A stretch of DNA of 64,000 nt, from contig OX638151.1 of NCBI GenBank assembly GCA_951804945.1, positions 60,574,001 to 60,638,000 of the forward strand. The letters run 5' to 3'. The DNA comes from Podarcis cretensis (taxonomy: Eukaryota). Shown piece after piece: positions 3,190-58,020 of the stretch (the stretch's first letter is position 1; each line of letters begins with the position of its first letter). The notes beneath the pieces are model-generated. The model saw nothing but the letters and a program-made list of their open reading frames with translations, did not search any database and was not told the origin of the DNA. The position numbers were made by a program, and so were the translations under genes.

Positions 3190-3235
<46 letters not shown>

Positions 3236-12868: not shown

Positions 12869-12902
<34 letters not shown>

Positions 12903-17096: not shown

Positions 17097-17127
<31 letters not shown>

Positions 17128-36085: not shown

Positions 36086-36335
36086 ATTGTTGTTGTTTAG
36101 TTGTTTAGTCATGTCCGACTCTTCGTGACCCCATGGACCAGAGCACGCCAGGCACTCCTGCCTTCCACTGCCTCCCGCAGTTTGGTCAGACTCATGTTTG
36201 TAGCTTCGAGAACACTGTCCAGCCATCTCGTCCTCTTTCGTCCCCTTCTCCTTGTGCCCTCAGTCTTTCCCAACATCAGGGTCTTTTCCAGGGAGTCTTC
36301 TCTTCTCATGAGGTGGCCAAAGTATTGGAGCCTCA
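36086..36335 (-). mobile_element. BovB (RTE) LINE 3' fragment
   Basis: LQYFGHLMRREDSLEKTLMLGKTEG..; (GTT)n at the left end. Confidence 0.9.
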
Positions 36336-37633
36336 ATAGTTATACTAAATAAAATTATTATTGTACTACTTGCCCTTGAGTGGTCCAACTGACATTGATT
36401 TTTTTTTTAACATTTGGAGTTGCACTAACTGTGGATTTTTCTCTCTCTTTTGAACAACTGGTCACCTCCTTTCCAAACACTAGATTGCAAGCATCTTCTG
36501 AAAACTCAGATTCAAAAGCAGTTTGGTTTGCAGAATTGGGTGTGAGAATCTAGGGTCTCTCGGAACTTGTTTCACTGTCATTTGGATCCTGAATGATATT
36601 TTGGCATCATTCTCTACTGATAATCTTCCAAAATCCTTTTACCTCATAATACTGCTGTGGGTGAGCACCTGCCCTCTAAAACTCATTAACACAAAACTCC
36701 AACAGTTGTTAGATCCAATACAATTCCATGGGCTGCAACAGTCAATTCAAAAAGCGGCTTGGCAGCTCTTGACAATCCATCATTATATTGGGCCTGTTAA
36801 ATCTTTAGGTTTGTTTCCCTCGTATTCTACAGGCAGCTATAGCCGCTGTATTTCCTGCTGAAATTCTTTCCATAGAAATGGTTGGGGTCATTGCCTGAAA
36901 ATAACTGAAAACAGTGACTTGAGAGAAGTACACATTATTTCAGGTTAATAGCATCATTTTGAAAGTGATGCTGCTTTTTTCCTCTGAGAAAACTCTCACC
37001 TGTTTTAGAAAGGCATTTATTTATTTACATTGCCCATCGAGAAAATTAGGACATTATTTCCAATTCATGCTTTGTCTTCTGTGGGGATGGTGTTAGTGTC
37101 TTCTGTTATTTTGTGCCTTTATTCCCAAGAAACAACAACAACCTAAATGAATGCATAAATAAACAAGGAGCTGTAAATCATTTACTGCCCTTCTGCAGAG
37201 CAGAATGGAAGCATATAAAACACCCAGAGGGAGAATCCCAAAGGGAGTCGAGGGAGGTCCAGATAAAGGATGTGCTAAGCGGCTGCTATAGTAAAGACAA
37301 AAATGTGAGGTGGGGGAAGGGTTTTCTTCTTGGGGAGAATTCGGCTCTAAAATAGGTGGTGACTTTGGCATGAGTAATCATGGTCTCCAGTGGCTATCTC
37401 TGTGGAATCCTATTGTTGGACCCAGAACGCCCTTGCGTCTTCAGGCAGGAGGCATTCAAGTTTAGAAAGGGAGGGAGGAAACACCACAGGGTAAAAGCTG
37501 TGAGGAACCATTTACACCACACCCTCATCCAAACCCTCATCCAAGAGACAAAGTTGAAAGGGCGGGAAGTCTCTGTTCAAGTTCCTGGCTGGTGCTATTT
37601 GAGGAAACTTTGGTTGTGATGGGACCTTGCAAA

Positions 37634-37700
37634 ATGCCCTTCTCTGCCCTCTTGGCGGCTTCTCTGCTGATGTCTTCAAGCGGGACCAACACTGGGGAGG
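37634..37700 (+). CDS. ZP-module gene exon 1 (signal peptide)
   Basis: aaaATG MPFSALLAASLLMSSSGTNTGE|gtgagt; phase 1 fits the next exon; an in-frame upstream ATG at 37619 is possible. Confidence 0.65.
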
Positions 37701-40700
37701 GTGAGTTCTCTCAGGAGGAATCTACTTTGAAACAGTGTCTAGATCTTCTGTGGTATTATTGGTCCAATTCTAAATTTATCTTTGTCATATCTACAGTTTA
37801 AATGCGTTTGTCATAATGTAGCTTTGAAAACATAGCTTGTGGCACACTTTGATGTTTCTGTGCGTTGTGGAAAAGGTTCAGTATAGATACCTTAACAGGT
37901 TTTTTAAAAAATTACGAAGTCGCCTTTTCTATTGAATCAATGTTAGTAATAAGAACTGGCCTGGACTTGCACACCACCTTTGTGATAGTTATAGATTTTA
38001 GAATAGATAATACACTGTTAAAGTACATGGTTGGAAATTCCTGAAATTGCTTGCCTCAATGGGTATCACTTATTGAAATACGTTCTTTAAAAGATTAATA
38101 TAAATTTGCTGGTTATAATCATAGCTGTCAACTTTTCCCTTTTCTTGTGAGGAATCCTATTCGGAATAAGGGAATGTCCCTTAAAAAAAGGGGAAAGTTG
38201 ACAGCTATGGTTATAATAAACTACCATGTAAGGCTTGTGATTTTAGGCTACTACTGATATCCCCAGTTTTAATAATAGTCTAAACTGAGAGAGAAAGTAT
38301 CTGTGTGACTTTTTAAAACCCAATTTTCCTGGTATAAGGAATGCAGGCTTTCTTGAGGAGCAAGGATGAACCCTAAGAAACACAAACGCCAGCCCTCCTT
38401 CATGTAGGCTGAGGGAGCCCACAGTGGGGAAAGAGCGAGGGAGCAAAAAGTGGGAGGAGAGGCACAAATAAAAATGGAGGGAGGAAAGGAGAAGGGGAAA
38501 TCCTCTGCAAGTAATCAGCTCAAACTTGTGGCAAGGGAGAAAATGAGATGAAGGGATTACGGCGAAAACAAACACACAACACTCTATAACGCTGCAAACT
38601 TTCCACCACTGGCTTTGGTGCCCACTCACCATCACAAAGATTACCTCTGTGAGAATGTGGCCATGACAGACAGAAAATGATTCTCTAGTCTTGCATTCAA
38701 GGAGAGGACTCCTATGCCTCTAACATTTGTGAAAGTTTAGAAGAGGGAATACAAGTTAGTCTGAGTTGTATTTTTTTTGGGGGGGGGAAGGAAAAATTGA
38801 TCCCTCCTGGAAAGTTATGAAGCAAATTCTGCAGGCACCCTTCTAAGTAATTTATGTGAGATGAGCCAACCTGGCTGCTCCCATCTTTCAGTGTTTTAGA
38901 CAATAAGTGAGGTCAGAAAGGTTATTAAGGAGTTTGAACGCCAGGTGATAGAGATCCCTGGGTCCTTAGGATCCACTCTTTTCACTTTGTCCTTAATGCA
39001 CTTTTCCTGCTTCTGTCTCATCTTGTACTCCTTGAAATTTCTATAGTTTGCCCTTCCTTTTTTGCCTAGAAACTAGAGATGCACGTTTCCTGGTGATGGG
39101 TTAATTTTAGTACAGTACTCTAGAAGTTGTTTTCTGCAAATCCTGCCACACAACAAGTGCAGGTGGATGCTGTAGAATCCCACCCACTGCAAAATAACAA
39201 ATGGGAAAACTTTGCAAAGCACATTTAAAGCTAAAGACCAGACATGCATCAAGAATTCACTATTGCAGCTGAATTTTATACATGTCTACTGATGAGTCTT
39301 TGCTGTTTAATAGGGTTTATTCCCAAGTAAGAGAGTACAGGGTCGCAGTGTAGGTTTAGGGTTGGCATTGGGGAAAAGCAGGGTTCTTGTGCCTTTAAGA
39401 GCTGAATGGCAGCTAAAAATTCAACAGGTTAAGCATTTTCTAGTATGGACATACAATTGAGGAAAGCTTCACCTGCTGACATTCTGTCTGTCAGACATTT
39501 TGTGTTGTGTGCGGCAGAAGATTTATTTTTGGACCCTCCAATCCACCTGCAAAAGAGGTTACAAATTTGCATATTACATAAAGCATCTGTAAATGTTATG
39601 CAAATCCCTCTCCTCTTTTGCAAGTGGGACAGAGGGCCTAAACCACACACAGTGGACTGGGTACAGAAAATTCTGTTGGAACCCCTGTGCTCCATTGCTT
39701 CAAGGGTGAAAGAGGCTACATCTATTGACATCCATGCTATCACAACTGTTAAAGGTACATGAATCCTAAGATGAATTGTGCCTAGTCACTTTCCATCAGC
39801 ACAGCACTGTCATGCTCAGAATAATTCTGCGCGTGCTGTTGTTCAGGATTTTTGCTGGCACTCTCCTCCCTTCCCGTAAATTAACTGCTGCTTCTTGGCA
39901 GCTTTACAGACAGATTGGCAGCTGCAAAGCTCTAGCTTCTTTCAAGAAAACTCTGGGAACATGAAAACAGGAAAAATTCTGATCCCATCATTTTACATGT
40001 GGACAAGTAGGGTAAATTCTTGAAAGCTGGCCCACCAGCCTTTGGGCATAAGTCCTCCAGATAAAGTTTGATAGTGAATAAAGAGACACAACAATATTTC
40101 CCCTGATCCTTGGATAAACAACAACATATTTTTCTTAAAATTCATAGGACTTCTTTATTACTGATTTTAGAATAACACAGGTGGCACTCCATTTTAAAAA
40201 TCTACAGTTTCTGCTGAATTCATAAAATAGCCCACTCTGTTCTACATTTTGCATTAAAAAGCACTATAAATGTTTTAGAAATATTTTTATTAGAATAGTT
40301 TCGTAGAATGGTTATTATTTAATCAGAGTTTCCATATGTTTGTTCCATGTGTTCAACTTTTTATTTTGCATTATACATCTAAGACTGAAACCCTTTCTAT
40401 GTCCAGGGCAGCCGTCTACCATGCAGGCTAAACCCTACCTGCCCGCAGAATGTCTCACCTGAGTGGTGCGTGCTCTAGTTATCTCCCACTTGAACTACTG
40501 CAATGCGCTCTACGTGGGGCTGCCTTTGAAGGTGACTCAGAAACTACAACTAATCCAGAAATGCAGCAGCTAGACCGGTGACTGGGAGTGGCCACCGAGA
40601 CTATATAACACCAGTCCTAAAGGATCTTCAGTGGCTCCCACTATGTTTCCGAGCACCATTCAAAGTGTTGGTGCTGACCTTTAAAGCACTAAACAGTCTC

Positions 40701-43700
40701 AGCCCAGACATTGAGGTCCTCCTCTGAGGGTCTTCTGCTGGTTCCCTCACTGCGAAAAGTGAAGTTACAGGGAACCATTAGACAGAGGGCCTTCTCAGTA
40801 GTGGTGCCCCCCCCCCCCCGGTGAAACATCCTCCCTTCAGATGTCAAGAAGAAAAAAGAATTACACAACTTTTAGAAGACATCTAAAGGCAGCCCTGTAT
40901 CAGGAGGTTTTTCATGCTTGATGTTTTTATTATGTTTTTAGATATGCTATAAGCTGCCCAGAGTGGCTGGGGAACCCAGCCAGATTGGCGGGGTATAAAT
41001 AATAAAATTAGTAGTAGTAGTAGCAGCAGCAGCAGTAGTATATTGTAAACCACTCTGTAAACTGCATTGTAGACCACTTACTAATTCAGGGATAGATCGG
41101 TTCAGTGTTCTTCCATTGTAACATCAGTTCTAGACTACAGCTCAAATTTATTTTCAGGATTCCAAAAACAAACAAACAAACAAAACATGAGACAGTAATA
41201 ATAGTTTAGGGGTTTGGGCAGGGGCTATTTTCCATCCCTTCCCCTCCCTTTGAGGCCTCATTTGCTAACCTCATCTGCCAGTTGATAGAAATATGATAAT
41301 CTAGATTAGTCATTCATCTCTGAAAACAATTCTGTGCTAAGATTAGGCTTTCAATACATACTGATCAACCACTGAGAGCAATGTGCTAATTCACCTTCCA
41401 TTTTAGCCACCCAAAGGCTAACAATTCTTTCCTGAATGTAAACTATATTTCTTTCAAGCCAATAACCTCTGTGACATTTCAGCAGACCATTAGTAAGTAA
41501 GGACCTTCAATGGAACCTGCTCTGCGATGCTTCAAGAAGCGCAAGAATCAATCAGCCAAAAGCTCTGTTAACATTATTTGGGTCTGATAAATATACAATT
41601 TCTGAAAGGCCAAAGCTAATTGGTGTTCTGAAGATACTTCCATTGCATCCAAAAACAAATGTGTTTTATGAAAAGCCCTGCAGCTGATTTGACCTGGAAT
41701 ACAGAAACAATAGAATGGGACTCAACAAAACCAGCTATCTTCAAAAAGCTCAATAAAACTAGAAAATAGCTTACTCCCCCTCACATTTGTAAACTCTGTA
41801 ATGATCCTCATAATCAGGAACACAACAGGTCAAAACACCTCCTTTCAAACCACTCTCTTCAGATCCCCCAATCTACCTGTGAAAAGAGTTTGGGAGGCCA
41901 TGTTTCCCAGCAGCTCTTGCACCTTAGTGGCTGCTGTTGAGTTCTAGGCATCAGGGGAGCTGTGAAATGTAATTATCCCAAGTGTCTTGAGTCCACACCC
42001 TGGAGGGCTCTGGTATACAAGCTCTCTCCTGTTTTTTACTCAGCTGTTGGAACACAGGGAGAGAGGCAAGCCTTACACAGATCCATCTAGAGCTCTTGCT
42101 GGGGTCAAACTACTGTCATGTGAGTTTGGGGGAGGGAAAGGGATGGTAAGAAGGGAGGGAAGAGTGACTGACAGCTCTGGCAGGCTGTCCTACAATATAA
42201 GTTAGGCTCAAATGCAGAAGGATCCAAGTCTGGGGAAACTCCACTTTGCCTCCATCACAAGCAGGAATATGATTTCCCGTCATAGACATCAAAACCTATT
42301 GAACTGCTCCTGCAAATGGAATAGCTTTCACCCACAATATTCCTGTATCTTATAGCAAGGCAAGAATTCTGACACTACACCTGCCAAAAAAAACAAGCTT
42401 GGATAAGCAGCAACAACTGGTATCCTCAGTGAAGAAACAGGCACTGTAGCTGTTCCACAGCTGGGACAATCTGGTCTAATCCTAGATACCATTAAACTAG
42501 TTTAGCATTTCAGCTACACTGAAGAATACACAATAAAACTGAAGACACTAGGAGATATCTTTATTGCAGTGGGTCATAAGACTGGGTTATACAGAAATGT
42601 TCGCTTTCCCAGAATAGTAGTAATTATTGTAAGAATTGGACATGAGTGACTGGCAATGTTTGCAACTGGGTCACAAGCCCCACATTACAAGTAGGGCTAT
42701 GCCATTTTTGGAAATTGCTAAGAAACCGGTACTCTGCTAGGGAAAAACTGGTCATGCACACGTGAGTTCTGAACTGCAGCCAGTGCATCTGATTTGGGCT
42801 TTAACTTTCGTAAGAATCCCAAAGAGAGCCAGTGTGGTGTAGTGGTTAAGAGCGGTGGACTCGTAATCTGGAGAATCGGGTTTGCTTCCCCGCTCCTCCA
42901 CATGCAGCTGCTGGGTGACCTTGGGCCAGTCACACTTCTCTGAAGTCTCTCAGCCTCACTCACCTCACAGAGTGTTTGTTGTGGGGGAGGAAGGGAAGGG
43001 AGAATGTTAGCTGCTTGGAGACTCCTTAGGGTAGTGATAAAGCGGGATATCAAATCCAAACTCTTCTTCTTCTTGAAGTGTTCTGGGAAGCCGCAGAATT
43101 CACTGATATTCACTAACCTGTATTCTAGAATGTATCCCAAGAATAATATTTCCTTTGCAATTTCACCTTTGCTTCCAGCGATCCAGATTCAAACTCTGTA
43201 CATACACACATGCAGATCACACACACATACACACACACCAGAAAGCCGGGAGTGTTCTTCCCATTCCTTCCCCTTTAAAAAGCAGTGTTTTTATATACAG
43301 ACACAGAAATCAACGAGACTATCATATGTACTAAGGACCTGATTGAAGTAGAAATTCCGAGTGCATTCTTCCTGTCAAAGAACCCTCCAATATTAGTAAG
43401 TACTATGATTTTATAATTTTAATTAAAAAAACCAATCCATTCAGTCACTTTAACATGAGGTAATCCCCTTTATTTTGGATGTGTGAGTGCCAATGCATAT
43501 TTAGCAACCACTGCATGCACATGCACACACACACACACACACACACACACGGGTGGGACCCTGAAGTTTGTAGAGTTGCAAACAAAAAAATGGCGGGGGG
43601 GGGGCAGACCCAACAAGGAGGGTGGGACCCAAAGACAGCCCAAGGAGGACTGAGTTGCCATGAATGCTGACTGTTGTGTGTGGTGGTGGTGAGGTGAGAA

Positions 43701-46700
43701 TGGAAGGGTATGGCTGGCCCCCTGAACAGGAATACTCCACAGTGCAACATTTTGTTGTAGATTTCATTTGGGGGTTTTTTCCTGGATGCTTTCCTTTTTC
43801 CCATTACAATTCAATAACCCAGAGGAGCTCATAAAGAGTTGTGGCTAATAGCCAATTTCATTGCCTCTAGTTTCTAGAACTGTGGCATAAGGGAACATTA
43901 TTTATCCAGATCTTATCTGTAGAGATCTTCCACTATCTTCATCGTCATATGCTTTATATTCTAATTTTCTGGGAGCTGCCAGCCAGACGATGATAAAATG
44001 TGAGCTGGTACATTGCAGACTACACCACATCAAAATATTGGGAAAATGCCAGGTCTTTCTTAGTGCCTTCAACCATGAAATATTTTAACTGTACTCAGAA
44101 AATTCAGGGGGAGTGCCTTTGGAAAGAGGGGTAGATTTTTCTCATGCTGCCGCTTTCTCTGTGTCCAGCTCCTAATGGGATCATAGGCTACATCACATGA
44201 ATGGATTTTCATTCCCCCCAAAATTGTTGCTGACACATGATAGAATGTACCTGTTGATAGAAGGCAGGTTGGCACTTGGTAAGATTGTATCTTGATGACT
44301 GTGAGTCCCAGAAGGCAAAGGAGGCATTTTTCATGCAATAATGCCATGCTTCCAAGTGAAATGACAGGTGTCAGGACCAAGGATATGCTGATTAGCTAGC
44401 GCAACTGTAAACATAATCTAAAATTGTGTTGAGAATTATATTGTAAAATTAAAAGGAAAAAGAAAGGTTTTTTCTTTGCAGGTCTCTGATTTACACCTTA
44501 ATGACCCATCATGTCATGGTACTCAAGTAGGAAACCTCTACATATTCAGCATTAAGACCAACTTCACAGACTGTGGAACACGAATGGTAATATGCAAAAG
44601 ATTTTGCTGTAGTCTTATGACTTTTTACATACCTTCTCTGTACACTACATTTATCCTCTTGCATCCTGCTTATTTAGTATATGAAAGAACAGCTTTTGAA
44701 GAATGACAGAATCTCACACACATTAAATTCTATATGGAACTAAATAATCATCTGCTTTGTCTCTATTCATAATGTAAGCCACAAAAACATCATTCCTGCC
44801 TTTTAGAAACTGATTGAGAATAGCCAAAACACCAAGAACCAGATTCACATGTGAATCATACAGAGGTGGTATAGATTTATATGCAGCTTTCAGTGGTTCT
44901 CAACCTGTGGGTCCCCAGATGTTGTTGGACTTCAACTCCCATCATCCCTGAGCTCTGGCCTCGCTAGCTAGAGGGTGATGGGAGTTGTAGTTCAACAACA
45001 TCTGGGGACCCACAGGTTGAAAAAGGCTGTGACTTGATTGTGTTTGCGGAAGTGTGTGTGTGTGTGTGGTGTTGCTTTTTATGTATTCCGTTTCTTACAT
45101 GTCCTTCATGATACGGTCCCAGGGCAGGTTACAGCAATTTAAAAATACAATATTAAAAACAGTTCAAAACAAGTTCCATGATACTATTGGATTCTATTAT
45201 TTTAAGCAAAAACCATTGGTTAAACATTGGTCACCTTCACACCATACTTTAAAAGACATGACTTCCCTCAAATAACCCTGGGAACTGTAGTTTGTTAAGG
45301 GTGCTGGAAAGTACCCATTCTAGGGTGGCAGAAACTATACCAATACTCAAAATCCCCCAAATGCATTTGTGACTTATCACAGTATTTCACTACACATCTG
45401 GGTTCAAGGGCAGAAGCAGTCTGTAGAGGTCTCTAGTGCCTCTCCCCTCTCCCTGCCCAGAAAGAATATGCTGTTACTTGTGTGATCCTTAATCTCTTTC
45501 TTTGAACTGGGAGAGCAGAATGGCTAAGAACTGACCTGGGTCTGGGGCTCTGCTCAATGGACCTTTGATAAGACATCAGTGAGGATCTTCCTTTCCTTAC
45601 TGGGTGCTCTAGTTCAGGCACAGGCAAACTCGGCTCTCCAGATGTTTTGGGACTACAATTCCCATCATCCCTGACCACTGGTCCTGTTAGCTAGGGATCA
45701 TGGGAGTTGTAGTCCCAAAACATCTGGAGGGCCATGTTTGCCTATGCCTGCTCTAGTTGGTTAAGGAGCAAAGCTTTCAAGTCAGGAAGCACAGCCTCAG
45801 AGCAACCTTCAGTTCCCACTGCCACTACATTATTATTTTCCTATCAACTTAAGTTTTGGGACTTACTGGAATATTTTTGTGTTTTACTAACTTGCAGGAT
45901 TCTGATGGTGCACATATTATTTTCATCAACACCATACAGAACCGCTTCTCTGATATAATCACAAGAACTTTTATCAATATCACATTTGCCTGCCGATATC
46001 CTATTAATTATATGGTACAGCAACCTAATGGAGAAAATAAAATCAGTGTTGATATCAGGTAAGCCTGTTGCCCTTGTTGTTTTCTGTATACCAATATTGT
46101 GCCTGGATTAGAAATAGACAAATCTGTAAATTATGGTTTCTCATTTTTCCAATTCAGTTATCACCATTTCCAAATTAGTTTGTGATTTGTTTATTTTTAA
46201 ATCCACATGCACACATTTTGGTACACCATTTCCCCTGATATATGCATTTTTGCAAGCAATGTTCCCTAACATGATACATTTCTCTATTTCCCCCCACAAA
46301 TGGAAGCACTTTTGTGTGCACTTTTCCATAACATGCAGTATTTGGGAATGCTTTTTTGATTGCATAACTGCACTGTAATGTTTGGAGAAGTGTGAATTTT
46401 GAACAGGAGCTGCATTTTGGTTCACATATTGGTTTGGGAAGTGCAAATTACATATGTTCACATTTAAATACAAACTGAACTCATTTTGTCCTCCATCCCA
46501 AATCTGGATTAAAGTCACTTGAGAAGTATGCAGATAATATTGGGTTAATCACTGCACTAAGTTAGCTGCATAAATAGTGTGCTCTGCTGAAGTTCCTTGA
46601 GACGAGTGGGACTCTCTTGTTTAGAGCTCTTACTGTGTTTTCCATAGCATAGCTTCTGTGCATGAAAGGCAGGCATGCATCTAGTTAGGACAAGCTTATT

Positions 46701-46978
46701 GTTGTATCACCATACTTGGGAAACTTTCACTGGCTGAAAGTTTCTGCCTGTCATGCAGCTGGTCCAAGTCACAGGAGCTTGCCAGAAAAAAAAGTTGCAA
46801 ATTTACTTAAAAGGGTATCATCACCACTGGCTACTAGAGCTGCTCCATTCCTTGCAACCTGATCCTGGGCATTTGTGTATAATACTGAAGTACCAGTATA
46901 AGAGCTCTGCAATGCCAGTGTTGTAATTTCCATAGCTGGCCCAGGCCTCACCATTAGGCTTCCCTAGTAAATCATGCA

Positions 46979-47023
<45 letters not shown>

Positions 47024-50000
47024 TAATGACAATTATCATGGAAATTGTGTCATTTCAACATCTCCATCATATCTATTTGTCTTTGTTTGTGCCAGGACCA
47101 TTACACTAAATACAGAAGATGGAAATTTCTCTGTATCCATGATGCTGTACAAAGACCGGCATTTTGAAGACATGTGGACTACCATTCCCTTTTTGACTCT
47201 AGAGGACAACATATTTGTCAAAGTGAAAATGGTACCTGGGGTTACTGAGTCCCTGATGAATCTGAGAGTGGAGGTGTTGGATAGATAGCAAAGACAAGAC
47301 CACCAGGCACAGGCCAAGATACATTGGGGGTGGGGAGCAAAAGCAACACAAATATGAGAACATTTTTGAATGTTACTATTTACTTGTGACTTACTTTATT
47401 ATCATCCATTCGCAGGAGTGGGGTTGAGAGGGGATAATAAAATACATAATTTTTTTAAACAGAGAATGAATTTCCTATCAAACATACGGTTTCAGACAGA
47501 TAGGGCCAGTGGGAATAGGGACATCAGGAGCATTAGGGCTGAGAGCTAACAATATCCAAATCAGAGAATCTACATTCACCCATAGGCCTCAGCCTTACTG
47601 TTCATGGATAAATCCTAACCAGGGGCCTGGGGAGGAATGAAGCAGCAGATCTACCCTACTGCTCTAGCACCAGCTAAGGGTGAAGGTAGAAGACCCCCCC
47701 CCCCCATTTTTTGCCATGCCAGGAAATGGTATAACTCAGGGGCCCGAGATAAGGCCCCTCAGGGGACATGAGAGGAATTGGATCCAGAAGATCTAAAATT
47801 GTTGGCACCCACCCCCTACTCCAAAATGATCTGATTTGGAGCTTGCCATTTGCCACTGCTGGTGGGAGAAGCCAGCAGAGACAAACCTATACCCCATCCT
47901 AACACTACTCCCTAACACTGCTCATCCACCAACCTTGTGGGTGGGGTAGGTACTCTTTTTCTGTGCATGTATTGGGGGGTGGGGAATGCAGAAGAGAAAA
48001 TTGCTTGCAATAATCTGTATCTCTAGGAGAAAGGTGCACTAAAATACTGATGGATTTTTGCAAGGACTAAAAAAAAAAAGATTTGCAAACTGATGCAGAA
48101 CTGATATGCCAAGCTGAACTGAAGTCTGGAAAAATACAAAACAGAGAGAACCCAATACTGACAACATTGTCTAGCCCTAGTGACAGCTGCCTTCTATTTG
48201 TACCCAGCATCTAGTTGTCACGGTTTCTTGTTAGCTGTCATGGCTGACAGTCATTGTTAGGCTCATCCTCCATGTACCTATCTAGTCCTTTTGAAAGTTA
48301 CTGACTTAAGAAACAAGAACCCTGTTTATGTTCTGTCTCTGCATTTGGCAGGTCCCAGGCAACTTAATCATTAGGCTTGAAAACTGCTGGTCTACCCCAA
48401 CGAAGGATCCTGTTCATGCTGTCCAGTATTCTTTTATCAGAGACAGGTTCGTATCCCGCTTTGGTAAAATGGACGACTCATTCTGAAAACATATTGGGCT
48501 GAGCTTTCCATTTCATTTAAAAAACAAAGCAAAATGACTGCTGTGAAGGGGAGGCTGACCAGATGAAGTCAAAGATGTGCTTCAAGAGTTGAGTGTAGGT
48601 ATTATCAGCGTCAGACTCATTGATCTCATTGTTGTTGAGAATACTAGAACACATTCTGAGGGAGACTGTAATGAGAATGCTAGTAATAGCAAAAGGTTGC
48701 TTTGGTGAATGGTGCTGAATTTGACCTCTCCTCCTTACTGTTTCCTCTTCTCTTAAGCAAATGAGCCAGAGGCTTATTTTTCACAAATAGCAGGTGCCTT
48801 TGCATCCTTGTGCGGACCCATCTCTCTTTATGTAACAAGTAAATAAATGTTTGTCCATATGTGCCTGTACCTCTAAAGCTGTACATGTAAACAGTATGAT
48901 TTGAGTAAATCAGCCTTGAACGATGGCAGAATCCATAGCTTCAATGGTAACCCCAAGTACCTTGGCATAGAAGGTTTTTCTGACTTGTGAGGAGCAGGGA
49001 ACCATTGGTCACACTGAAAGGGCTGGTAAAATGGAAAAAGATGTCCAATATAGACCTCTTTGATGCAAGAAATGCTCACAGTTGAAAAAGCATTCTAATA
49101 GTAGTATACTTTTGAGTTAAGTACTTTGCACTAAGACTGGGTTTTTTCTAGGTAGTCTATCCATAATGTGTGTATTCATTTTTTGCAGAGATGCCAGCTT
49201 TTGATGTAATCATATATTTTTGGTTTTGTTCCTGCATAGCTGCCCACAATTTGTAAAAGATGAAACCCTATCAGTAATAACAAATGGAGAAGGCGAAGAA
49301 GCACTCTTCAGGATACAAATGTTCAAATTTGTTGGCATTGCATACAACCATGTTTTCTTACACTGCACAGTTCAGATTTGCCATGGCACAACAGCTGCTT
49401 GCAAACCAGTAAGTTGATTTTTTACAGGAAAATTTCACATTCAAAATTTGAATTAAAACTGCATTTTGCACTCAAAGTTGAGGCTATTTTTGTTCTGGTG
49501 TGTTACTGTAAAGGGGAATGAAAAGAAAATGCTAAAGATGGTATTTCCTTCTAGCAGCTGGACTCTGAATGGAAGGGAGCCTGGCTGGGGGGAAATGATT
49601 GGGGAGACTAGCTGTGAGGCAAAAAGAAGCACACAAGATGTTTCAATAGGAGCCCTTGTCTGCACATTGCTATTGAAGCCCCCTCATTGGTCCTTCAGAG
49701 TCAAGTATTTTCTGTTGTGCTGTTCCACTTCAATCCATGTGTTTCTGGAGTGTGTCACACATGAATATTCATCACATATCACTTCATCATTTTGTGGCAA
49801 CTTTAAGAAATGAACGAGCTATCAGAGTACAGTACTCCGAATGGGAAAGTCATCTTGAGATTAGAGTTAACTGTAGGAATGCTTCAAGAAAAATATGTTA
49901 GTGTGTGCATTTAACAGATCCTGATTTGTCAAAGCTAAGAAACAGAAAGGTTTTTGCAGCTGCCAATGAAGGAGAATCCTTAAAAAAAAAAAAAAGCTGA

Positions 50001-53000
50001 CTGAACAATTGATTATCAGAAGCACTGGAGCTCATTTTTTTTTGTTTGTTTATCTTCCTCTGTGCTTTTTCCCTCTTGCTACCAGAGCTATCGCTGCAGA
50101 TAAAACTATCATTTCATAGCTTTAATTGCAGCCAGCTCATACAGCTACAGGTTATCAAATAATGAGCATGGGTGTATGACTCATCCAGTCCCTTTCCACC
50201 AGAGCTGGAATGATCCAATCAATATCCAGCATCACCATTTATTAAGGCAGAACTGGAAGCTGCCTGGGTTTGTCTTCCTGACCCAGAGTCTGTGATATGG
50301 GAAGGCCAAGGAGATCAGAATGATTTCTGGGGTTGAGACAGAGAAGAGGTGGTGGAGGAATTCCTGTAATCTGGCATACAAGGATTGTTGTGGCTTCCTC
50401 CCCTTCCTGATTTGGAAGGTTACAATAGAGCATGCAATTGTCAGCGGGGAGTTTGGGGTTGAGTGGAGAAGGGCTAAGGACAATAGTGTATGTACTGCTT
50501 TTACAGATTCCTGAATCACAGTCTTTCAAACACACAATGCAGTGTCATAGGAACATATCTGAAAAAGTACTCAGTCCCAATGGCAGTAGAACTAGGTGAC
50601 CTTTACTGGCAGTCAACTAGCAAATTATTTCTGCAATTAAAGCAGGGCTTTTTAACAGATGCAGTATAATATCCTGTTTCAGAATGACACTGTTCCTTAA
50701 AACTGTTTGTAGCTGGTAGGTGACTGAATAGTGTACACTTTAGTATCCTTGTGAATTATTTTAGAAAATAGATGCTTCTACCTTAGCAGCAATTGTCATC
50801 TTTCTGAAAAAACTCCAGAGAAGGATTTATTTTCCTAGTGCTATAATGAAAATGTCACTACACTTATATACTGAGCAGGGACAAAATGAAAAAGTCAGTG
50901 TGATGTTTTGGATGGAGACAGTTATAATATCAAAGGCTAGCACTAGATGGCTTATAAAACAGTTCAGGCCAATAACAACAGTGACTCTTATGCAAGAAAG
51001 CCCCATTCAGTTAAATTTAAGAGTCTACAGTGTATGTAGAATGAGAACTTTTAAAGAGTAGTAGTGTAGAGTTCAGGGACGCAGGTGGCGCTGTGGGTTA
51101 AAGCCTCAGCGCCTAGGGCTTGCCGATCGAAAGGTCGGCGGTTTGAATCCCTGCGGCGGGGTGCGCTCCCGCTGCTCGGTCCCAGCGCCTGCCAACCTAG
51201 CAGTTCGAAAGCACCTCCGGGTGCAAGTAGATAAATAGGGACCGCTTACCAGCGGGAAGGTAAACGGCGTTTCCGTGTGCGGCTCTGGCTCTGGCTCTGG
51301 CCAGAGCAGCGATGTCACGCTGGCCACGTGACCCGGAAGTGTCTCCGGACAGCGCTGGCCCCTGGCCTCTTAAGTGAGATGGGCGCACAACCCCAGAGTC
51401 TGTCAAGACTGGCCCGTACGGGCAGGGGTACCTTTACCTTTAGTGTAGAGTTCCAAAATAGTGAGTCATGTGGATCATAGGGAGTTTCTGGTTAGTTCAC
51501 TATGGGACTTATTACTTGCTTGCTCAGAAAAGAGATGTGTAAAAAAAATAGGAGACATTCCTTCTGGTTTCCATGTTGAGCAGTATTTTCTGTAGTAAAC
51601 CTTCAGTTCATCCACACACACCTTTCTCTCACACACGCGTGCACACAATGCTTAACTTCCTCTAGTCATACCCATTGCAAGGTCCGTATATTTAAAGCCA
51701 TGGTTTTCTCAGTAGTGATGTATGGAAGTGAGAGCTGGTCCATCAAGAAGGCTGATCGCCGAAGAATTGATGCTTTTGAATTATGGTGCTGGAGGAGACT
51801 CTTGAGAGTCCCATGGACTGCAAGAAGATTAAACGTATCCATTCTGAAGGAAATCAGCCCTGAGTGCTCACTGAAAGGACAGATCGTGAAGCTGAGACTC
51901 CAGTACTTTGGCCACCTCATGAGAAGAGAAGACTCCCTGGAAAAGACCCTGATGTTGGGAAAGACTGAGGGCACAAGGAGAAGGGGACGACAGAGGACGA
52001 GATGGTTGGACAGTGTTCTCGAAGCTACAAACATGAGCCTGACCAAACTGCGGGAGGCAGTGGAAGACAGGAGTGCCTGGCGTGCTCTGGTCCATGGGGT
52101 CAGGAAGAGTCGGACACGACTAAACGACTAAACAACAACAACAAATGTTGTGGGCCCCTCCACTGCAGGCTCAGGTTCTATATATGTGTAAAGGACCCAC
52201 ATAAAGACACCAGTTTTCGCATTGTCTCATATCCAAAAGGACACAAAGACCCTAGAACCTAGAACCCCTGGAATCTTGTAGGTAAGAAAAGGTAAAAGGC
52301 CCCTGGATGGTTAAGTCCAGTCAAAGACAATATGGGGTGCGGTGCTTATCTCGCTTCAGGCCAAGGGAGCCGCCGTTTGTTGTGACAGCATTCTGGGTCA
52401 TGTGGCCAGCATGACTAAATTGCTTCTGGCGCAACGGAACACCATGAGAGAAGTCAAAGCGCACAAAAATGCTGTATAGCTTCCTATCACGACAATACTT
52501 ATTTAACTACTTGCACTGGCATGCTTACAAACTGCTAGGCTGGCAGAAGCTGGGACAGAGCAATGGGAAATCACCCCGTCATGGGGATTCGAACCACCAA
52601 CCTCCTGAGCAGCAAGCCGAAGAGGCTTAATGGTTTAGACCACAGCACCACCCACTCCCAGAGATTGGGGTGGCATGTAACAATACCTTTAATTCTGACT
52701 GGCACATTATTTTCTAAGTAGCCTTTTACCTAACCAAATGGGAATTTACTTGTAATCCTAGGGTTTCTTATTGTGCACTATAGTACTTTGATAATCACTT
52801 TAGGCTCACACATATTTACTAGTTTGTGTTTTTTCTAGAACTGCACAGATGACAGTCTGACCAGAACTAAAAGAGAAGTCCCACCCTTTTCTAGTCACAT
52901 GGTATCTTATGGCCCTATAAAGCGAAAGGTGGCAGATAATGAAGAGACTAATGTTGGTAAGTGGCTAAAAAAGTGCATGCCTTAAAATATAATTCTTCAA

Positions 53001-53879
53001 TAGAGTTACAGAGAACAAGAGTGCTTCTTTTTTGTAGCATACAAATGTCCAATCTAGTAGAATAAAGATAATGGGTGGAATTAAACATCATGCTTGATGA
53101 ACATCCTTCCTAAAGCATTTCAGCTTACCAGACAGAACCACCCACATTCCCGCCCCCGTGCACTGTTCTGGGGGGATGCGGGGAAGAGATGGGGGGAAAC
53201 CTTATTGTGTAAGCACAAATCTTTGTGCAAAAATTGAAAAACATCAATTAAGCAACATCAATTAAAAATCCTAATGTTAATAATATAAGAAGTGGTTCAT
53301 CCTCCATTCCCAGAAAATGACTTTAAACACACTGAAAACTCACCTAAGTGACTGGCCAGTAAATGTGTATGTCTGCAGGTTCTGTATTCAGCATCTCCAG
53401 GGAAGGAGAGTCGGCAAAGACCTCGGCCTGTGATCCTGAAGAGCCATTTCTAGTCAGAGTAGACAATACACTGGGCTAGATGGACCAATGATGAGCGCAA
53501 TGCAACTTTATGCATTTGTAGCAAACATCTCAGATCAGGATATTCCTCTCTTACTGCCACCTGGTGCAGGTGAAATCCATGTTGCTGCTCTGTTTAAAGC
53601 AGCATGCAAATGCAATTCAAAGTTTTATAATGGTTAACATTATTCCACACATTAGATTTGGTGCGAAAGTATTAACTTTTCTGGAAATCGTTCTGCTTTC
53701 TTTCAGACAGAGGAAAACTTCTACCAGTAGACATTTTGATCCTTAGTGGAATTCTGATTTCTGTACTGGTGACAACGGTAATTTTTGGCAATCTTTTTCT
53801 TCAGTCACGAAGGACCTACCCTACTATGCAAGCACAACTAACAATGTCCCGTTTTCTCAACTCTGAAGTTCCATCATGA
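37634..53879 (+). CDS. Uncharacterised single-ZP-module type I membrane glycoprotein (UMOD/GP2/tectorin/ZPD-like), 9 coding exons, 372 aa
   Basis: Exons 37634-37700, 43301-43395, 44482-44586, 45898-46058, 47096-47231, 48352-48446, 49240-49408, 52839-52956 and 53707-53879 sum to 1119 nt, open, with matching GT-AG phases. 10 ZP cysteines, CWSTP, FRIQMFKF, VFLHC..IC, RTKR, SYGPI, TM helix. Confidence 0.9.
38120..38209. mobile_element. 90-bp hAT MITE, TIR CATAGCTGTCAACTTT, 8-bp TSD GTTATAAT
   Basis: Perfect 16-bp inverted termini; TSD at 38112-38119 and 38210-38217. Confidence 0.88.
40398..41030 (+). mobile_element. L2-clade LINE 3' fragment
   Basis: GTCCAGGGCAGC..TACTGCAATGCGCTCTACGTGGG..CCCAGAGTGGCTGGGG..AAATAATAAA. 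Confidence 0.85.
42823..43074 (+). mobile_element. Squam3-like SINE, second copy
   Basis: Highly similar to 16858-17126; ends about 230 bp upstream of ZP exon 2. Confidence 0.82.
43301..43395 (+). CDS. ZP-module gene exon 2 (ZP-N start, Cys1)
   Basis: tacag|DTEINETIICTKDLIEVEIPSAFFLSKNPPIL|gtaagt. Confidence 0.88.
43524..43550. repeat. (CA)n microsatellite
   Basis: Seen directly. Confidence 0.95.
44482..44586 (+). CDS. ZP-module gene exon 3 (Cys2, Cys3)
   Basis: tgcag|VSDLHLNDPSCHGTQVGNLYIFSIKTNFTDCGTRM|gtaata. Confidence 0.92.
44891..45029. mobile_element. Related hAT-type palindromic MITE
   Basis: CAACCTGTGGGTCCCCAGATGTTGTTG..CAACAACATCTGGGGACCCACAGGTTG. Confidence 0.8.
45615..45750. 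mobile_element. hAT-type palindromic MITE (136 bp), 8-bp TSD CTCTAGTT
   Basis: Same loop as the 5244 copy; TSD at 45607-45614 and 45751-45758. Confidence 0.88.
45898..46058 (+). CDS. ZP-module gene exon 4 (Cys4)
   Basis: tgcag|DSDGAHIIFINTIQ..IITRTFINITFACRYPINYMV..VDIR|gtaagc. Confidence 0.92.
46982..47022. repeat. (GT)n microsatellite
   Basis: Seen directly, about 75 nt upstream of ZP exon 5. Confidence 0.95.
47096..47231 (+). CDS. ZP-module gene exon 5 (IHP, ZP-C start)
   Basis: ccag|TITLNTEDGNFSVSMMLYKD..LTLEDNIFVKVKM|gtacct. Confidence 0.88.
48352..48446 (+). CDS. ZP-module gene exon 6
   Basis: ggcag|VPGNLIIRLENCWSTPTKDPVHAVQYSFIRD|gttcgt. Confidence 0.9.
49240..49408 (+). CDS. ZP-module gene exon 7
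   Basis: catag|CPQFVKDETLSVITNGEGEEALFRIQMFKFVG..VFLHCTVQICHGTTAACKP|gtaagt. Confidence 0.93.
51076..51440 (+). mobile_element. Sauria SINE, young, with 13-bp TSD
   Basis: TAGTGTAGAGTTC at 51062-51074 and 51441-51453; near-identical to the 19.3-kb copy. Confidence 0.93.
51678..52143 (+). mobile_element. BovB (RTE) LINE 3' fragment
   Basis: MVFSVVMYGSESWSIKKADRRRIDAFELWCWRRLLRVPWTARR..LQYFGHLMRREDSLEKTLMLGK; (AAC)n tail. Confidence 0.93.
52280..52660 (-). mobile_element. Sauria SINE, older diverged copy
   Basis: AAAGGTAAAAGG.. start, GGGTCATGTGGCCAGCATGAC, ..GATTCGAACC..GGTTTAGACCACAGCACCACC. Confidence 0.8.
52839..52956 (+). CDS. ZP-module gene exon 8 (furin site, EHP)
   Basis: ctag|NCTDDSLTRTKREVPPFSSHMVSYGPIKRKVADNEETNV|gtaagt. 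Confidence 0.9.
53707..53879 (+). CDS. ZP-module gene exon 9 (TM helix, cytoplasmic tail, stop)
   Basis: ttcag|DRGKLLPVDILILSGILISVLVTTVIFGNLFLQSRRTYPTMQAQLTMSRFLNSEVPS*. Confidence 0.85.
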
Positions 53880-56769: not shown

Positions 56770-58020
56770 CCCAGAGATAATGGCCGCGAATAAAATGCAA
56801 GGCGCCCTTGTATTTTACAATAAGGGAGAGCGACGCGGAGGTGTCGCCGGACTCCGGGACAGCCTCGCTCACGCTCCCCCGGGGAGAAGCTCGCTTCCCT
56901 TTCGCTGCGTCACCGCATGGAGTCCCGTTGCTCCTCCTCCTCCTCCTCCCTCCTTTACGACACCCGCTCCCCCCACCGCCACCGTGCAGCCAGGGAAGAG
57001 AGCGCGCGCGAGCAAGCGGCGTAGCCGGAAAGCGCCGCTGCGAGCCTGCTCTGGCAAGTCCTCCGCCCCACCCTTCACCGGAACCGGATCGAATCTTCAG
57101 GGCGTCCCGGGGAGCGGCTGCCTCTCTCGACTGCTCCTCACTCGTCCTCCCTCCACGTTCGAGCTGCTTTACGCGCAGGAGGCGGGAGAGCGACCGAGCG
57201 GTGAGTCGTGTGTGTGTGTGTGAGAGAGAGAGAGAGGGAACGAGAACAGGGACGCGGGACGGGACGCGTCTTGAGGGCTTTTCTCTGTCTGTCTCTTCTC
57301 CCCTCGGTGGGCTCGAACTACGGCTGCTGCTGCTACTGCTGCTCCCTGCCGGCCGACAAGTAAACAAATGGCGGCTGGCAGGGAGGTGGGTCGGTGCGTG
57401 GTGTGGAGCTGCGGGGTCCCCTTCTGGCTCCTGCCCGAGCAGGATGGGCCCGCCTGGTCTGGGGCGGTCAGCCCACCTTCTCGCAGGGCTGTGAAGCGGG
57501 ATGGGAGTGATGGTGGTCGTCGGGGGCCGGGGGGGGGGGCAATGACTGGCTGACAGCTGGCGCGGTCCTTTCTGAGGAGGCCCCGGGAGGTGCTTTCCTT
57601 GGAGCAGTGGCGCTGCTGCTTTTGGCCTCCCCCCCCCCCGTTGTGTTTAAAGACGGGTCTCAAAGGAGGGTCGGGGTGGGTGCCAGGGAGGGAGGGAGGG
57701 AGGGGGAAGATACGCCTGTGGCGCTGGCTCCTTCCCTTCTCTTCGCTGCCCGCCCCTCCTCTCCTCTCTTTCCCCTTCGGTGTAGATGGAAACAATGGAC
57801 AGAGGGGAATGGACCGCCTCCTCCTTGAGCCGATTACTTAGCATGGCTACGGCAGTAATATGCGAAGCTGCTCAACCACACACACAACACACAGACGCCC
57901 AGCTCCCAGTGGTCAGAAAAGCCCTATTGTGAGTTGGGGTGTGTTGGTGCGGCTGCTGCAGGCATCGTCCCCGCCTCAAATTAGTACAGAGAAGCGTGCT
58001 CGATTCAACGGCGGGGATTT
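56770..58020 (+). promoter_or_regulatory. CpG-island promoter of the next gene (probably FBXO30 by synteny)
   Basis: Abrupt GC/CpG-rich block, ETS-like CCGGAA sites, YY1-like CAAATGGCGGC at 57365-57375. In mammals FBXO30 follows SHPRH on the same strand (recalled synteny). No FBXO30 coding sequence is in the window. Confidence 0.75.
57040..57200 (+). other. Putative non-coding first exon (FBXO30-like 5'UTR); start approximate
   Basis: Donor gagcg|GTGAGT at 57200/57201 inside the CpG island, followed by a long AT-rich intron-like region to the window end. Confidence 0.5.

What the first reader, a model, noticed from the sequence alone, without database searches (positions are those of the whole stretch)
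37634..53879. Intact, hidden 9-exon ZP-module gene between SHPRH and the putative FBXO30 promoter
Seen: nine small exons splice into an uninterrupted 372-aa ORF. It has a signal peptide, ZP-N with 4 Cys, the IHP segment GNFSVSMMLY, ZP-C with 6 Cys (10-Cys type), five N-glycosylation sequons (NET, NFT, NIT, NFS, NCT), an RTKR furin site, the EHP MVSYGPI and a TM helix. Known: this is the complete activation kit of polymerising ZP proteins (cleavage releases the EHP and filaments form). The motifs resemble UMOD/GP2/TECTA/TECTB/ZPD more than ZP1-4. Inference: I recall no coding gene between SHPRH and FBXO30 in human or mouse, and the named family members lie elsewhere. This may be an uncharacterised filament-forming matrix protein (egg coat, inner-ear or sensory gel, or glandular secretion) kept in non-mammalian vertebrates and lost in mammals.
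Basis: partly seen in the sequence, partly recalled or inferred. Interest (0 to 1): 0.85.

Follow-up and report, generated by a model that had tools for sequence, protein, structure and literature searches.

The report
Unnamed ancient ZP-module gene, lizard copy
The nine exons are a real, spliced gene for a small membrane-anchored ZP-module ("zona pellucida-like") matrix protein. It belongs to an old, very conserved vertebrate family, found from lamprey to crocodilians, that databases predict under misleading names, that nobody seems to have studied, and that does not appear among bird or mammal proteins.

Summary
**Observation: confirmed.**
- Nine GT..AG exons on the + strand (37619/37634 to 53879) join into one open frame.
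- The exons hit Pfam ZP-N and ZP-C in colinear order.
- Contigs from four runs (four studies, three organisms) join E3-E4, E4-E5 and E5-E6 exactly at the predicted sites; one run joins E2-E3.

**What it is**
- It is the lacertid copy of a discrete family of about 375 aa: 98% identical in Podarcis, about 63% in Xenopus, 58% in elephant shark and 47% in lamprey.
- It is not "hidden". RefSeq predicts it in related species under unstable automatic names (GP2-like, uromodulin-like, alpha-tectorin-like).
- It is not UMOD or GP2: it forms a separate clade and has no EGF or D8C domain.
- It is not ZPD. Chicken ZPD has an EGF domain and birds have ZPD. The solved ZPD filament chain is as distant as UMOD.
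- None of the 120 best database relatives is from a bird or a mammal.

**Still inferred or unknown**
- Polymerisation after furin-type cleavage is inferred from the motifs, not shown.
- Tissue and function are unknown.
- Loss in mammals and birds was not tested at DNA level.

The scan had not noted this on other DNA.

The parts
37619..37700 (+). Exon 1: start codon (37619; second in-frame ATG at 37634) and signal peptide, phase 1 at the donor
   Evidence: donor AGG|GTGAGT. Annotated orthologues start at the first ATG.
43301..43395 (+). Exon 2: start of ZP-N, with Cys37 and sequon NET
   Evidence: Contigs of X1 and X2 begin at 43300/43301, and X2 joins 43395 to 44482. This acceptor is needed to match Podarcis without a gap.
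44482..44586 (+). Exon 3: ZP-N, with Cys70, Cys90 and sequon NFT
   Evidence: Pfam ZP-N positions 22-58, E 1.3e-4. Junction to exon 4 seen in X1, X8 and X10. Skipped in the predicted Podarcis isoform X2.
45898..46058 (+). Exon 4: end of ZP-N (Cys126, sequon NIT) and first part of the interdomain linker
   Evidence: Pfam ZP-N positions 63-101. Junction 46058|47096 seen in all four runs.
47096..47231 (+). Exon 5: linker end, internal hydrophobic patch GNFSVSMMLY (47121-47150, holding sequon NFS), start of ZP-C
   Evidence: Pfam ZP-C positions 2-47. Donor 47231, not 47273, is shown by the junction 47231|48352 in all four runs and by Podarcis.
48352..48446 (+). Exon 6: ZP-C, with Cys205 in the motif C-W-S-T-P
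   Evidence: Pfam ZP-C positions 47-74. Contigs cover 48351-48446.
49240..49408 (+). Exon 7: ZP-C, with Cys226, 267, 272 and 279
   Evidence: Pfam ZP-C positions 76-132, 39.1 bits, above the cut-off. UMOD E 5.9e-10 in the PDB. 80% identical to the gecko orthologue.
52839..52956 (+). Exon 8: Cys283 and sequon NCT, furin-type site RTKR (52863-52874), external hydrophobic patch (52896-52925)
   Evidence: R-x-K/R-R in nearly all 116 family sequences. The EHP aligns with the GP2 and UMOD 'LGPI' patch. The AF2 strand at residues 301-310 has pLDDT about 89.
53707..53879 (+). Exon 9: spacer, transmembrane helix (53724-53804), conserved 24-residue cytoplasmic tail, TGA at 53877-53879
   Evidence: Highest hydropathy window at residues 328-348. 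AF2 helix 328-356 with pLDDT 92-93. The tail is 60% conserved across the family. AATAAA signals lie about 90, 350 and 760 nt downstream.
1180..27369 (+). Upstream neighbour SHPRH, partial, same strand
   Evidence: SNF2 with embedded PHD, and SHPRH_helical-2nd. RING and helicase motif VI at 23.4-27.4 kb.
56700..57800 (.). Context only; not verified.
   Evidence: GC 0.554 in 56001-58000. No FBXO30 coding exon was found in the window.

Best explanation
**What it is (shown).** This is the lacertid copy of a single, ancient vertebrate gene for a type-I membrane protein of 377 aa. The protein is only a signal peptide, one ZP module (ZP-N, a very conserved linker, ZP-C of the 10-Cys UMOD type), a furin-type cleavage site, an external hydrophobic patch, a transmembrane helix and a short conserved cytoplasmic tail. 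The gene is intact, spliced and expressed. It has been under strong purifying selection since before lampreys and jawed vertebrates split. It is neither UMOD, GP2 nor ZPD.

**How it most likely works (inferred).** It probably works like its solved relatives UMOD, GP2 and ZPD:
- The N-glycosylated precursor travels to the cell surface.
- A proprotein-convertase-type or hepsin-type protease cuts at R290-T-K-R293.
- The external hydrophobic patch (residues 301-310) leaves ZP-C.
- The linker and the two half-modules rearrange into head-to-tail extracellular filaments, as a homopolymer or with a partner.

**Where it probably acts (weak inference).** The protein has no N-terminal 'branch' domain and evolves slowly. 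This points to a plain structural gel or apical matrix, in the way of ZPLD1 or TECTB, more than to a fast-evolving egg coat. The tissue is not known.
For: **Gene model and expression**
- Model and open frame.
- Colinear ZP-N and ZP-C hits of single exons.
- Spliced contigs with GT..AG joints in four runs from four studies.

**A discrete orthologous family**
- 97.9% identity to Podarcis, 81% to gecko, 63% to Xenopus, 58% to elephant shark, 47% to lamprey.
- The family HMM gives members 580-697 bits and everything else at most 151 bits.
- The family is one clade with SH-aLRT 100 and short branches, apart from UMOD, GP2 and the frog UMOD-like genes.

**Motif conservation in 116 sequences**
- Ten Cys are conserved and five sequons are kept in at least 111 of 116.
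- The cleavage site is R-x-K/R-R, the EHP is H-T/M-V-S-Y-G-P-I and the IHP is GNFSVSM-L/M-LY.
- The linker is the best conserved part (0.86).

**Relation to solved filament formers**
- GP2 6e-30 and UMOD 2e-26 with P0114. With the family profile: GP2 139 bits, UMOD 134 bits, ZPD chain 28yj 122 bits.
- The AF2 model has mean pLDDT 76.6, with ZP-N and ZP-C mostly 81-96.
- Foldseek puts the UMOD polymerisation region first (4.7e-20), then UMOD, ZPD and GP2 filaments. The ZP-C half fits a UMOD filament chain (9nu3_L) at 1.7 A and a GP2 fibril chain (8xc5_B) at 1.9 A.
- UMOD and branchless chicken ZPD are homopolymeric filaments (bioRxiv 10.1101/2025.05.09.653020).
Against: - Polymerisation, cleavage and secretion were not tested.
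- The trimer prediction gave no verdict.
- UMOD, GP2 and the tectorins are GPI-anchored. This protein has a TM helix and a cytoplasmic tail that is 60% conserved, which could mean a job at the membrane rather than in a matrix.
- The runs that hold the spliced form are only guessed to be RNA, and their tissues are coded, so the expression site is unknown.
- One contig of run X1 is intronic (43928-44211), so that run holds some unspliced RNA or DNA.
- Junctions E1-E2 and E6 to E9 rest on homology alone.
- dN/dS was not computed, because no orthologous coding DNA was available.
- The slow rate argues against an egg-coat role but does not exclude it.
Confidence: 0.68

Rival explanations
1. It is the lizard orthologue of the egg-coat gene ZPD, which is known in chicken and Xenopus, is absent from mammals and is UMOD-like.
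For: ZPD is UMOD-like and missing in mammals (PMC6262864; PMC2322995). This was my first guess.
Against: - Chicken ZPD has a calcium-binding EGF domain before the ZP module (PMC4475693; bioRxiv 10.1101/2025.05.09.653020). This protein starts ZP-N a few residues after the signal peptide and has one Cys before Cys70. Orthologues carry only ZP-N and ZP-C in Pfam.
- The solved ZPD filament chain 28yj scores 122 bits with the family profile, below GP2 and UMOD, against 580-697 bits for members. Identity is about 25%.
- Birds have ZPD, but no bird protein is among the 120 best relatives.
- The two X. laevis copies of this family carry only model (XP) accessions, named alpha-tectorin, not the curated ZPD record.
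- Chicken lists no ZPD between FBXO30 and SHPRH.
Confidence: 0.03
2. It is a recent, lineage-specific duplicate of GP2 or UMOD, as the RefSeq names 'GP2-like' and 'uromodulin-like' suggest, with a mucosal decoy function against bacteria.
For: The closest solved structures are GP2 and UMOD. Many such duplicates exist, for example the frog UMOD-like genes and the zebrafish omcins (PMC11415648).
Against: - The family is one well-supported clade from lamprey to lizard, outside the UMOD, GP2 and frog UMOD-like group.
- Identity to UMOD and GP2 is 24-28%.
- It has no D8C/D10C decoy module and no EGF domain.
- It evolves slowly, unlike immune-type duplicates.
- True UMOD-like genes with D8C exist separately in geckos (P0245 and P0246).
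Confidence: 0.03
3. It is a membrane-resident ZP protein that does not polymerise, such as a co-receptor or adhesion molecule in the manner of endoglin or betaglycan. The TM helix and the conserved tail would be the working parts.
For: - TM helix plus a 24-residue tail with near-invariant R-R, Y-P, A-Q-L-T and S-E-V motifs.
- Foldseek also finds endoglin and betaglycan ZP modules.
- The trimer prediction gave no support, which is not evidence either way.
Against: - A dibasic R-x-K/R-R site sits exactly between ZP-C and the EHP in nearly all 116 sequences, and the EHP and IHP are conserved. This is the arrangement of polymerising precursors.
- The linker, which builds the filament interface in UMOD, is the most conserved segment (0.86).
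- Sequence similarity to betaglycan is far weaker than to UMOD and GP2 (1e-6 against 1e-38).
Confidence: 0.17
4. It is an egg-coat or oviduct-related ZP subunit of egg-laying ectotherms, that is, a reproductive matrix protein.
For: - Most ZP-only proteins first described were egg-coat proteins.
- The distribution (fish, amphibians, non-avian reptiles) does not contradict it.
Against: - About 60% identity between lizard and shark, with short branches. This is unlike the fast-evolving frog UMOD-like genes in the same tree, whose branches are three to ten times longer.
- Birds keep a yolky egg and its ZP coat yet lack this gene among the hits.
- No expression data either way.
Confidence: 0.08
5. 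It is a pseudogene or a chance assembly of open frames.
For: None beyond the fact that the window's own annotation is not known to me.
Against: Intact frame, canonical splice sites, spliced contigs, 98% identity to an annotated orthologue, and all family-invariant residues kept.
Confidence: 0.01

Closest known systems
[quoted passage not shown]
   Same: - The ZP module is of the same 10-Cys type, and all Cys align.
- A dibasic cleavage site is followed by an EHP ending G-P-I.
- These are the best sequence and fold matches among solved structures.
- Both are homopolymeric filaments.
   Different: - No EGF domains and no D8C/D10C decoy module.
- TM helix plus conserved tail instead of a GPI anchor.
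- 24-28% identity, a separate clade and a different locus.
- UMOD and GP2 exist in mammals. This family was not found there.
ZPD (chicken egg-coat glycoprotein D; PDB 28yj filament)
   Same: - A small UMOD-like ZP protein with no long N-terminal branch.
- Absent from mammals.
- Forms homopolymeric filaments.
- Said to be sister to a 'tectorin alpha-like/GP2-like' clade that is probably this family.
   Different: - ZPD has one EGF domain before ZP-N. This protein has none.
- About 25% identity, 122 bits with the family profile.
- ZPD is present in birds; this family is not seen there.
- ZPD is not at FBXO30-SHPRH in chicken by name.
ZPLD1 (cupulin) and beta-tectorin (TECTB)
   Same: - By general knowledge these are ZP-only, slowly evolving subunits of acellular gels of the inner ear.
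- ZPLD1 polymerisation is governed by two hydrophobic motifs (PMC9692296, abstract seen).
- The language-model feature search ranked ZPLD1 clusters nearest, which is a lead only.
   Different: - Both have mammalian orthologues, whereas no mammalian protein is among the 120 best relatives. So this is not their orthologue.
Fish larval glycoprotein (LGP) and zebrafish omcins
   Same: UMOD-related ZP proteins outside mammals.
   Different: - LGP has an EGF domain, a very long branch and strong positive selection.
- Omcins carry D10C and EGF domains and are a teleost-specific tandem cluster.
- Both lie outside the family clade or the HMM score range.

Membership tests
ZP-module proteins (Pfam ZP-N PF23344 + ZP-C PF00100) | ZP-N domain with four conserved Cys | tested here: met
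   Exons 3 and 4 hit ZP-N positions 22-58 and 63-101. Cys37, 70, 90 and 126 are invariant. Orthologues carry PF23344. The AF2 ZP-N has pLDDT mostly 81-96.
ZP-module proteins (Pfam ZP-N PF23344 + ZP-C PF00100) | ZP-C domain following ZP-N in the same chain | tested here: met
   Exons 5 to 7 hit ZP-C positions 2-47, 47-74 and 76-132. Exon 7 alone is above the cut-off. Foldseek fits ZP-C to UMOD at 1.7 A and to GP2 at 1.9 A.
Polymerising ZP precursors (UMOD, GP2, ZP3, ZPD type) | Consensus furin-type cleavage site between ZP-C and the EHP | tested here: met
   RTKR at residues 290-293. R290 and R293 are invariant in 59 sequences, and the site reads R-x-K/R-R in nearly all 116.
Polymerising ZP precursors (UMOD, GP2, ZP3, ZPD type) | Internal and external hydrophobic patches | tested here: met
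   The IHP GNFSVSMMLY and the EHP H-M-V-S-Y-G-P-I are conserved. The EHP aligns with that of GP2 and is a confident strand in the model.
Polymerising ZP precursors (UMOD, GP2, ZP3, ZPD type) | C-terminal membrane anchor | tested here: met
   Hydropathy peak at residues 328-348. AF2 helix 328-356.
Polymerising ZP precursors (UMOD, GP2, ZP3, ZPD type) | Actual cleavage and assembly into filaments | not testable with these tools
   The trimer prediction returned 'no answer'. This needs cell-based or biochemical assays.
UMOD / GP2 | D8C/D10C decoy module, plus EGF domains in UMOD, N-terminal of the ZP module | tested here: not met
   Orthologues have only ZP-N and ZP-C. The mature protein begins ZP-N within about 10 residues of the signal peptide.
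UMOD / GP2 | Falls inside the UMOD/GP2 clade | tested here: not met
   Separate clade with support 100. HMM scores of 135-148 bits against 580-697 bits for members.
ZPD | [quoted passage not shown] | tested here: not met
   Architecture of ZPD. There is no EGF domain here.
ZPD | Close sequence relation to chicken ZPD (PDB 28yj) | tested here: not met
   122 bits with the family profile, below GP2 and UMOD. About 25% identity.
ZPD | Orthologues present in birds | tested here: not met
   No bird protein among the 120 best hits, all of which are at least 54% identical to the gecko query.
TECTA, TECTB, ZPLD1, OIT3, CUZD1, UMODL1, ZP1-4 | One-to-one orthologues in mammals | tested here: not met
   No mammalian protein among the 120 best hits. 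The only mammalian sequences found are UMOD and GP2, at 24-28% identity. Direct alignment with these named proteins was not done because their sequences were not obtained.
The unnamed ~375-aa 'GP2-like / alpha-tectorin-like' vertebrate family | Full-length match, same architecture and same invariant residues | tested here: met
   693 bits with the family HMM. 97.9% identity to Podarcis over 377 aa without gaps. All invariant columns are kept.
The unnamed ~375-aa 'GP2-like / alpha-tectorin-like' vertebrate family | Conserved position between SHPRH and FBXO30 in other species | not testable with these tools

The most novel reading that the evidence does not exclude
This is a single-copy, ZP-only, membrane-anchored filament protein that arose before lampreys and jawed vertebrates split. 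It has stayed about 60% identical for over 400 million years and has no characterised member. It is kept in every ectothermic vertebrate lineage sampled but was lost twice, in birds and in mammals. That would point to a conserved extracellular matrix, for instance in a sensory organ or an epithelium, that nobody has tied to a gene and that both warm-blooded lineages gave up.
Probability: 0.4. Interest if true: 0.6.

Novelty: new member of a known kind. Interest (0 to 1): 0.45.

Why it matters
ZP-module proteins build egg coats, inner-ear gels, urinary and gut defence filaments and many cuticles, and each characterised family has given clear biology. This family is as old as vertebrates and one of the slowest-evolving ZP proteins. 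Yet it carries three different misleading automatic names and has no paper. It also seems to be missing from exactly the two lineages, mammals and birds, in which most functional work is done, which may be why it was overlooked. A stable name, an expression map and a knock-out in zebrafish or Xenopus would be cheap. They could uncover an unrecognised matrix and give a clean minimal model for ZP polymerisation: a ZP module alone, without a branch or EGF domain.

Tried and rejected
**Models and hypotheses dropped**
- Splice-score-only model of 392 aa. It was wrong at the E2 acceptor and the E5 donor, and was corrected with Podarcis and the spliced contigs.
- ZPD hypothesis, my first guess. Rejected as set out above.
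- An argument from the published chicken zpD PCR primers. Dropped as too flimsy after alignment A2 showed the residue in question is invariant in the whole superfamily.

**Searches that did not reach ZPD**
- I tried to reach a ZPD sequence through two protein searches (P0042; P0081) and two name look-ups.
- They found frog UMOD-like genes, UMOD, GP2 and fish larval glycoprotein, but no ZPD.
- ZPD was finally reached through the PDB entry 28yj.

**Structure and complex predictions**
- First AF2 job with 59 family sequences: pLDDT 53.7, not used.
- Trimer prediction of the mature ectodomain: 'no answer', so no evidence for or against.
- Protein Atlas: only generic ZP clusters.

**Literature and earlier notes**
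- Searches for the zebrafish clone name, tecta.2, zpld2, LOC101748225, SHPRH or FBXO30 with zona pellucida, and gene loss in birds and mammals found no paper on this family.
- Earlier notes of the scan held only this same stretch and a ZP1 note.

**Closed or left out**
- The joined 377-aa protein was not sent to any database search. Exons were searched one by one by reference, and the 97.9%-identical Podarcis protein P0114 stood in for the whole.
- The joined model was built only inside local scripts from window.fa, for the frame check, local alignments and the tree.
- The N run at 23778-23927 was left alone.

Full report
**1. Is it there?**

Yes. A first model built from splice-site scores alone gave 392 aa. 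Alignment with the closest database protein showed two wrong choices.

With the E2 acceptor at 43301 and the E5 donor at 47231, the frame is open and gap-free against that protein. The exons are:
- E1 37619-37700
- E2 43301-43395
- E3 44482-44586
- E4 45898-46058
- E5 47096-47231
- E6 48352-48446
- E7 49240-49408
- E8 52839-52956
- E9 53707-53879

All introns are GT..AG.

The joined protein was never sent to a database search. It was built only inside local scripts from window.fa. The 97.9%-identical Podarcis protein P0114 stood in for it in remote tools.

**2. More than chance?**

Single exons hit consecutive pieces of Pfam ZP-N (E3 at 22-58, E4 at 63-101) and ZP-C (E5 at 2-47, E6 at 47-74, E7 at 76-132). 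E7 alone is above the curated cut-off. E7 alone also finds UMOD (5.9e-10) and GP2 among solved structures.

Public runs that hold 6-9% of the sampled words of a 6-kb stretch were laid on it. That share is about the exon share of the stretch.

Contigs from four runs, belonging to four studies and three organism labels, skip the introns exactly at the predicted sites:
- 44586|45898 in three runs
- 46058|47096 in four runs
- 47231|48352 in four runs
- 43395|44482 in one run

Contigs also begin at 43300/43301.

The runs are only guessed to be RNA and their tissues are coded. One intronic contig in X1 shows that this run also holds some unspliced RNA or DNA.

**3. Surroundings**

SHPRH lies upstream on the same strand. 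It shows SNF2 with an embedded PHD finger, the SHPRH second helical domain, a RING and helicase motif VI, up to 27.4 kb. Downstream there is only a G+C-rich stretch at 56.7-57.8 kb. No FBXO30 coding exon is in the window, so the FBXO30 side is unverified here.

In chicken the published order is EPM2A, FBXO30, LOC101748225, SHPRH, GRM1 (PMC10035218). In cattle it is EPM2A, FBXO30, SHPRH, GRM1 (PMC8341487).

**4. What family?**

An exhaustive HMMER search with E7 led to a gecko protein of 376 aa. A search with that protein found a family of about 375 aa carrying only ZP-N and ZP-C. Identity to the gecko query is:
- 76-93% in squamates
- 76% in turtles
- 71% in alligator
- 60-65% in frogs
- 64% in lungfish
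- 61% in coelacanth
- 54-62% in many teleosts, gar, sturgeon and bichir
- 58% in elephant shark

Lamprey proteins are 47% identical to the window's protein.

The names are automatic and inconsistent: GP2-like, uromodulin-like and alpha-tectorin-like. The coelacanth entry borrows a zebrafish clone name. The window's protein is 97.9% identical to the Podarcis entries and 95% to Zootoca and Lacerta agilis. So the source is a lacertid whose own protein is not in the collection.

A family HMM gives members 580-697 bits and everything else at most 151 bits. [quoted passage not shown] It has SH-aLRT 100, short branches and an inner order close to the species tree. It lies apart from UMOD, GP2, D8C-bearing gecko UMOD-like genes, frog UMOD-like genes, fish larval glycoprotein and an ascidian protein.

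**5. Not ZPD**

ZPD was the obvious rival and my first guess. Four lines argue against it:
- Chicken ZPD has a calcium-binding EGF domain before its ZP module (PMC4475693; bioRxiv 10.1101/2025.05.09.653020). The present protein has none.
- The PDB now holds a native ZPD filament (28yj). The depositors' molecule name is 'Uromodulin', but the entry title says ZPD. The family profile scores it 122 bits, below GP2 (139) and UMOD (134). Foldseek identity is about 25%.
- Birds have ZPD, but no bird protein is among the 120 best relatives.
- The X. laevis members of the family have only model accessions named alpha-tectorin.

Feng et al. 2018 drew a 'tectorin alpha-like/GP2-like' clade as sister of ZPD (PMC6262864). 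By its names this is probably the present family, seen but neither named nor studied.

By the same logic, any family with mammalian orthologues is excluded as a one-to-one match. This covers TECTA, TECTB, ZPLD1, OIT3, CUZD1, UMODL1 and ZP1-4, because no mammalian protein is among those 120 hits. I could not align them directly.

**6. Anatomy and conservation**

The layout is:
- signal peptide
- ZP-N at residues 30-128, with Cys37, 70, 90 and 126
- linker at 129-156
- ZP-C at 157-284, with Cys205, 226, 267, 272, 279 and 283
- RTKR at 290-293
- external patch at 301-310
- spacer
- TM helix at 327-353
- tail at 354-377

All ten Cys are invariant or 99% conserved, and they align with those of UMOD and GP2. 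The five sequons are each kept in at least 111 of 116 sequences. The cleavage site reads R-x-K/R-R throughout. The external patch and the internal patch are almost fixed.

The share of sequences identical to the lizard residue, by region, is:
- linker 0.86
- ZP-N 0.68
- ZP-C 0.68
- tail 0.60
- TM 0.42
- signal peptide 0.23
- spacer 0.23

The second AF2 model (147 sequences, mean pLDDT 76.6) gives confident ZP-N and ZP-C, an external-patch strand and a TM helix. The linker and the cleavage loop have low confidence. Foldseek ranks the UMOD polymerisation region first, then UMOD, ZPD and GP2 filaments, ZP3, endoglin and betaglycan.

**7. Mechanism**

Shown:
- A spliced gene encodes a complete ZP precursor.
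- It belongs to a strongly constrained, ancient family.

Inferred from established knowledge of UMOD, GP2, ZP3 and ZPD:
- Cleavage at the dibasic site frees the external patch.
- The module then opens and assembles head to tail, with the linker forming the inter-subunit strands.
- That the linker is the most conserved part fits this.

Open questions:
- Whether it forms a homopolymer or a heteropolymer.
- Which protease cuts it.
- Where it is made.

The TM helix with a conserved tail is unlike the GPI anchors of UMOD and GP2. It keeps alive a rival in which the protein works at the membrane (0.17). The trimer prediction gave no verdict.

**8. Novelty**

The gene is predicted in public annotation of related species, so it is not hidden. 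It is also a member of a well-known kind. What is not known is anything about this family: I found no paper, no stable name and no expression data.

Its apparent absence from both birds and mammals rests on one protein search, not on genome sequence. The unexplained chicken LOC101748225 sits exactly in this interval.

I rate it a new member of a known kind, of moderate interest.

Noticed in passing
window 44482-44586 (exon 3); proteins P0353, P0351, P0358: RefSeq predicts a Podarcis isoform X2 of 342 aa that lacks exactly residues 60-94, which is exon 3. The skip is in frame but removes two of the four ZP-N cysteines. The laid contigs show only the form with exon 3.
   Followed up: partly
window 49408 onward (intron 7); proteins P0004, P0127: Gecko and Sceloporus have a predicted 286-aa isoform that ends a few residues after exon 7 with a different short tail. 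It lacks Cys283, the cleavage site, the external patch and the TM helix. In the window, reading on from exon 7 into the intron meets a stop after two codons.
   Followed up: partly
window 44880-45030 and 45480-45880 (intron 3): Two stretches draw thousands of contigs at depths of 10,000 or more in all four runs, with many loose ends and odd joints. They look like high-copy interspersed repeats (SINE-like) that are carried in many transcripts.
   Followed up: no
window 51700-52131 (+), 36109-36336 (-), 27769-28470 (-): Open frames that look like reverse-transcriptase tails of LINE elements. The first two are near-copies of each other in opposite orientation, one in intron 7 of the ZP gene and one between SHPRH and the ZP gene.
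   Followed up: no
window 46981-47019, 43180-43240, 43500-43560: (TG)n/(CA)n microsatellites. One ends about 75 nt before the exon 5 acceptor.
   Followed up: no
window 23778-23927: A run of 150 N inside an SHPRH intron, between the two RING-coding exons.
   Followed up: no
chicken chromosome 3, between FBXO30 and SHPRH (not in the window): A published gene list names an uncharacterised LOC101748225 exactly where the lizard has this ZP gene (PMC10035218). It could be a non-coding RNA, a remnant or a diverged copy. No other paper mentions it.
   Followed up: partly
window 45944, 45946 (exon 4, codons 110-111): All four laid runs read His-Leu, as in Podarcis, where the window has Arg-Phe. Both are replacement changes at two poorly conserved ZP-N positions.
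   Followed up: yes
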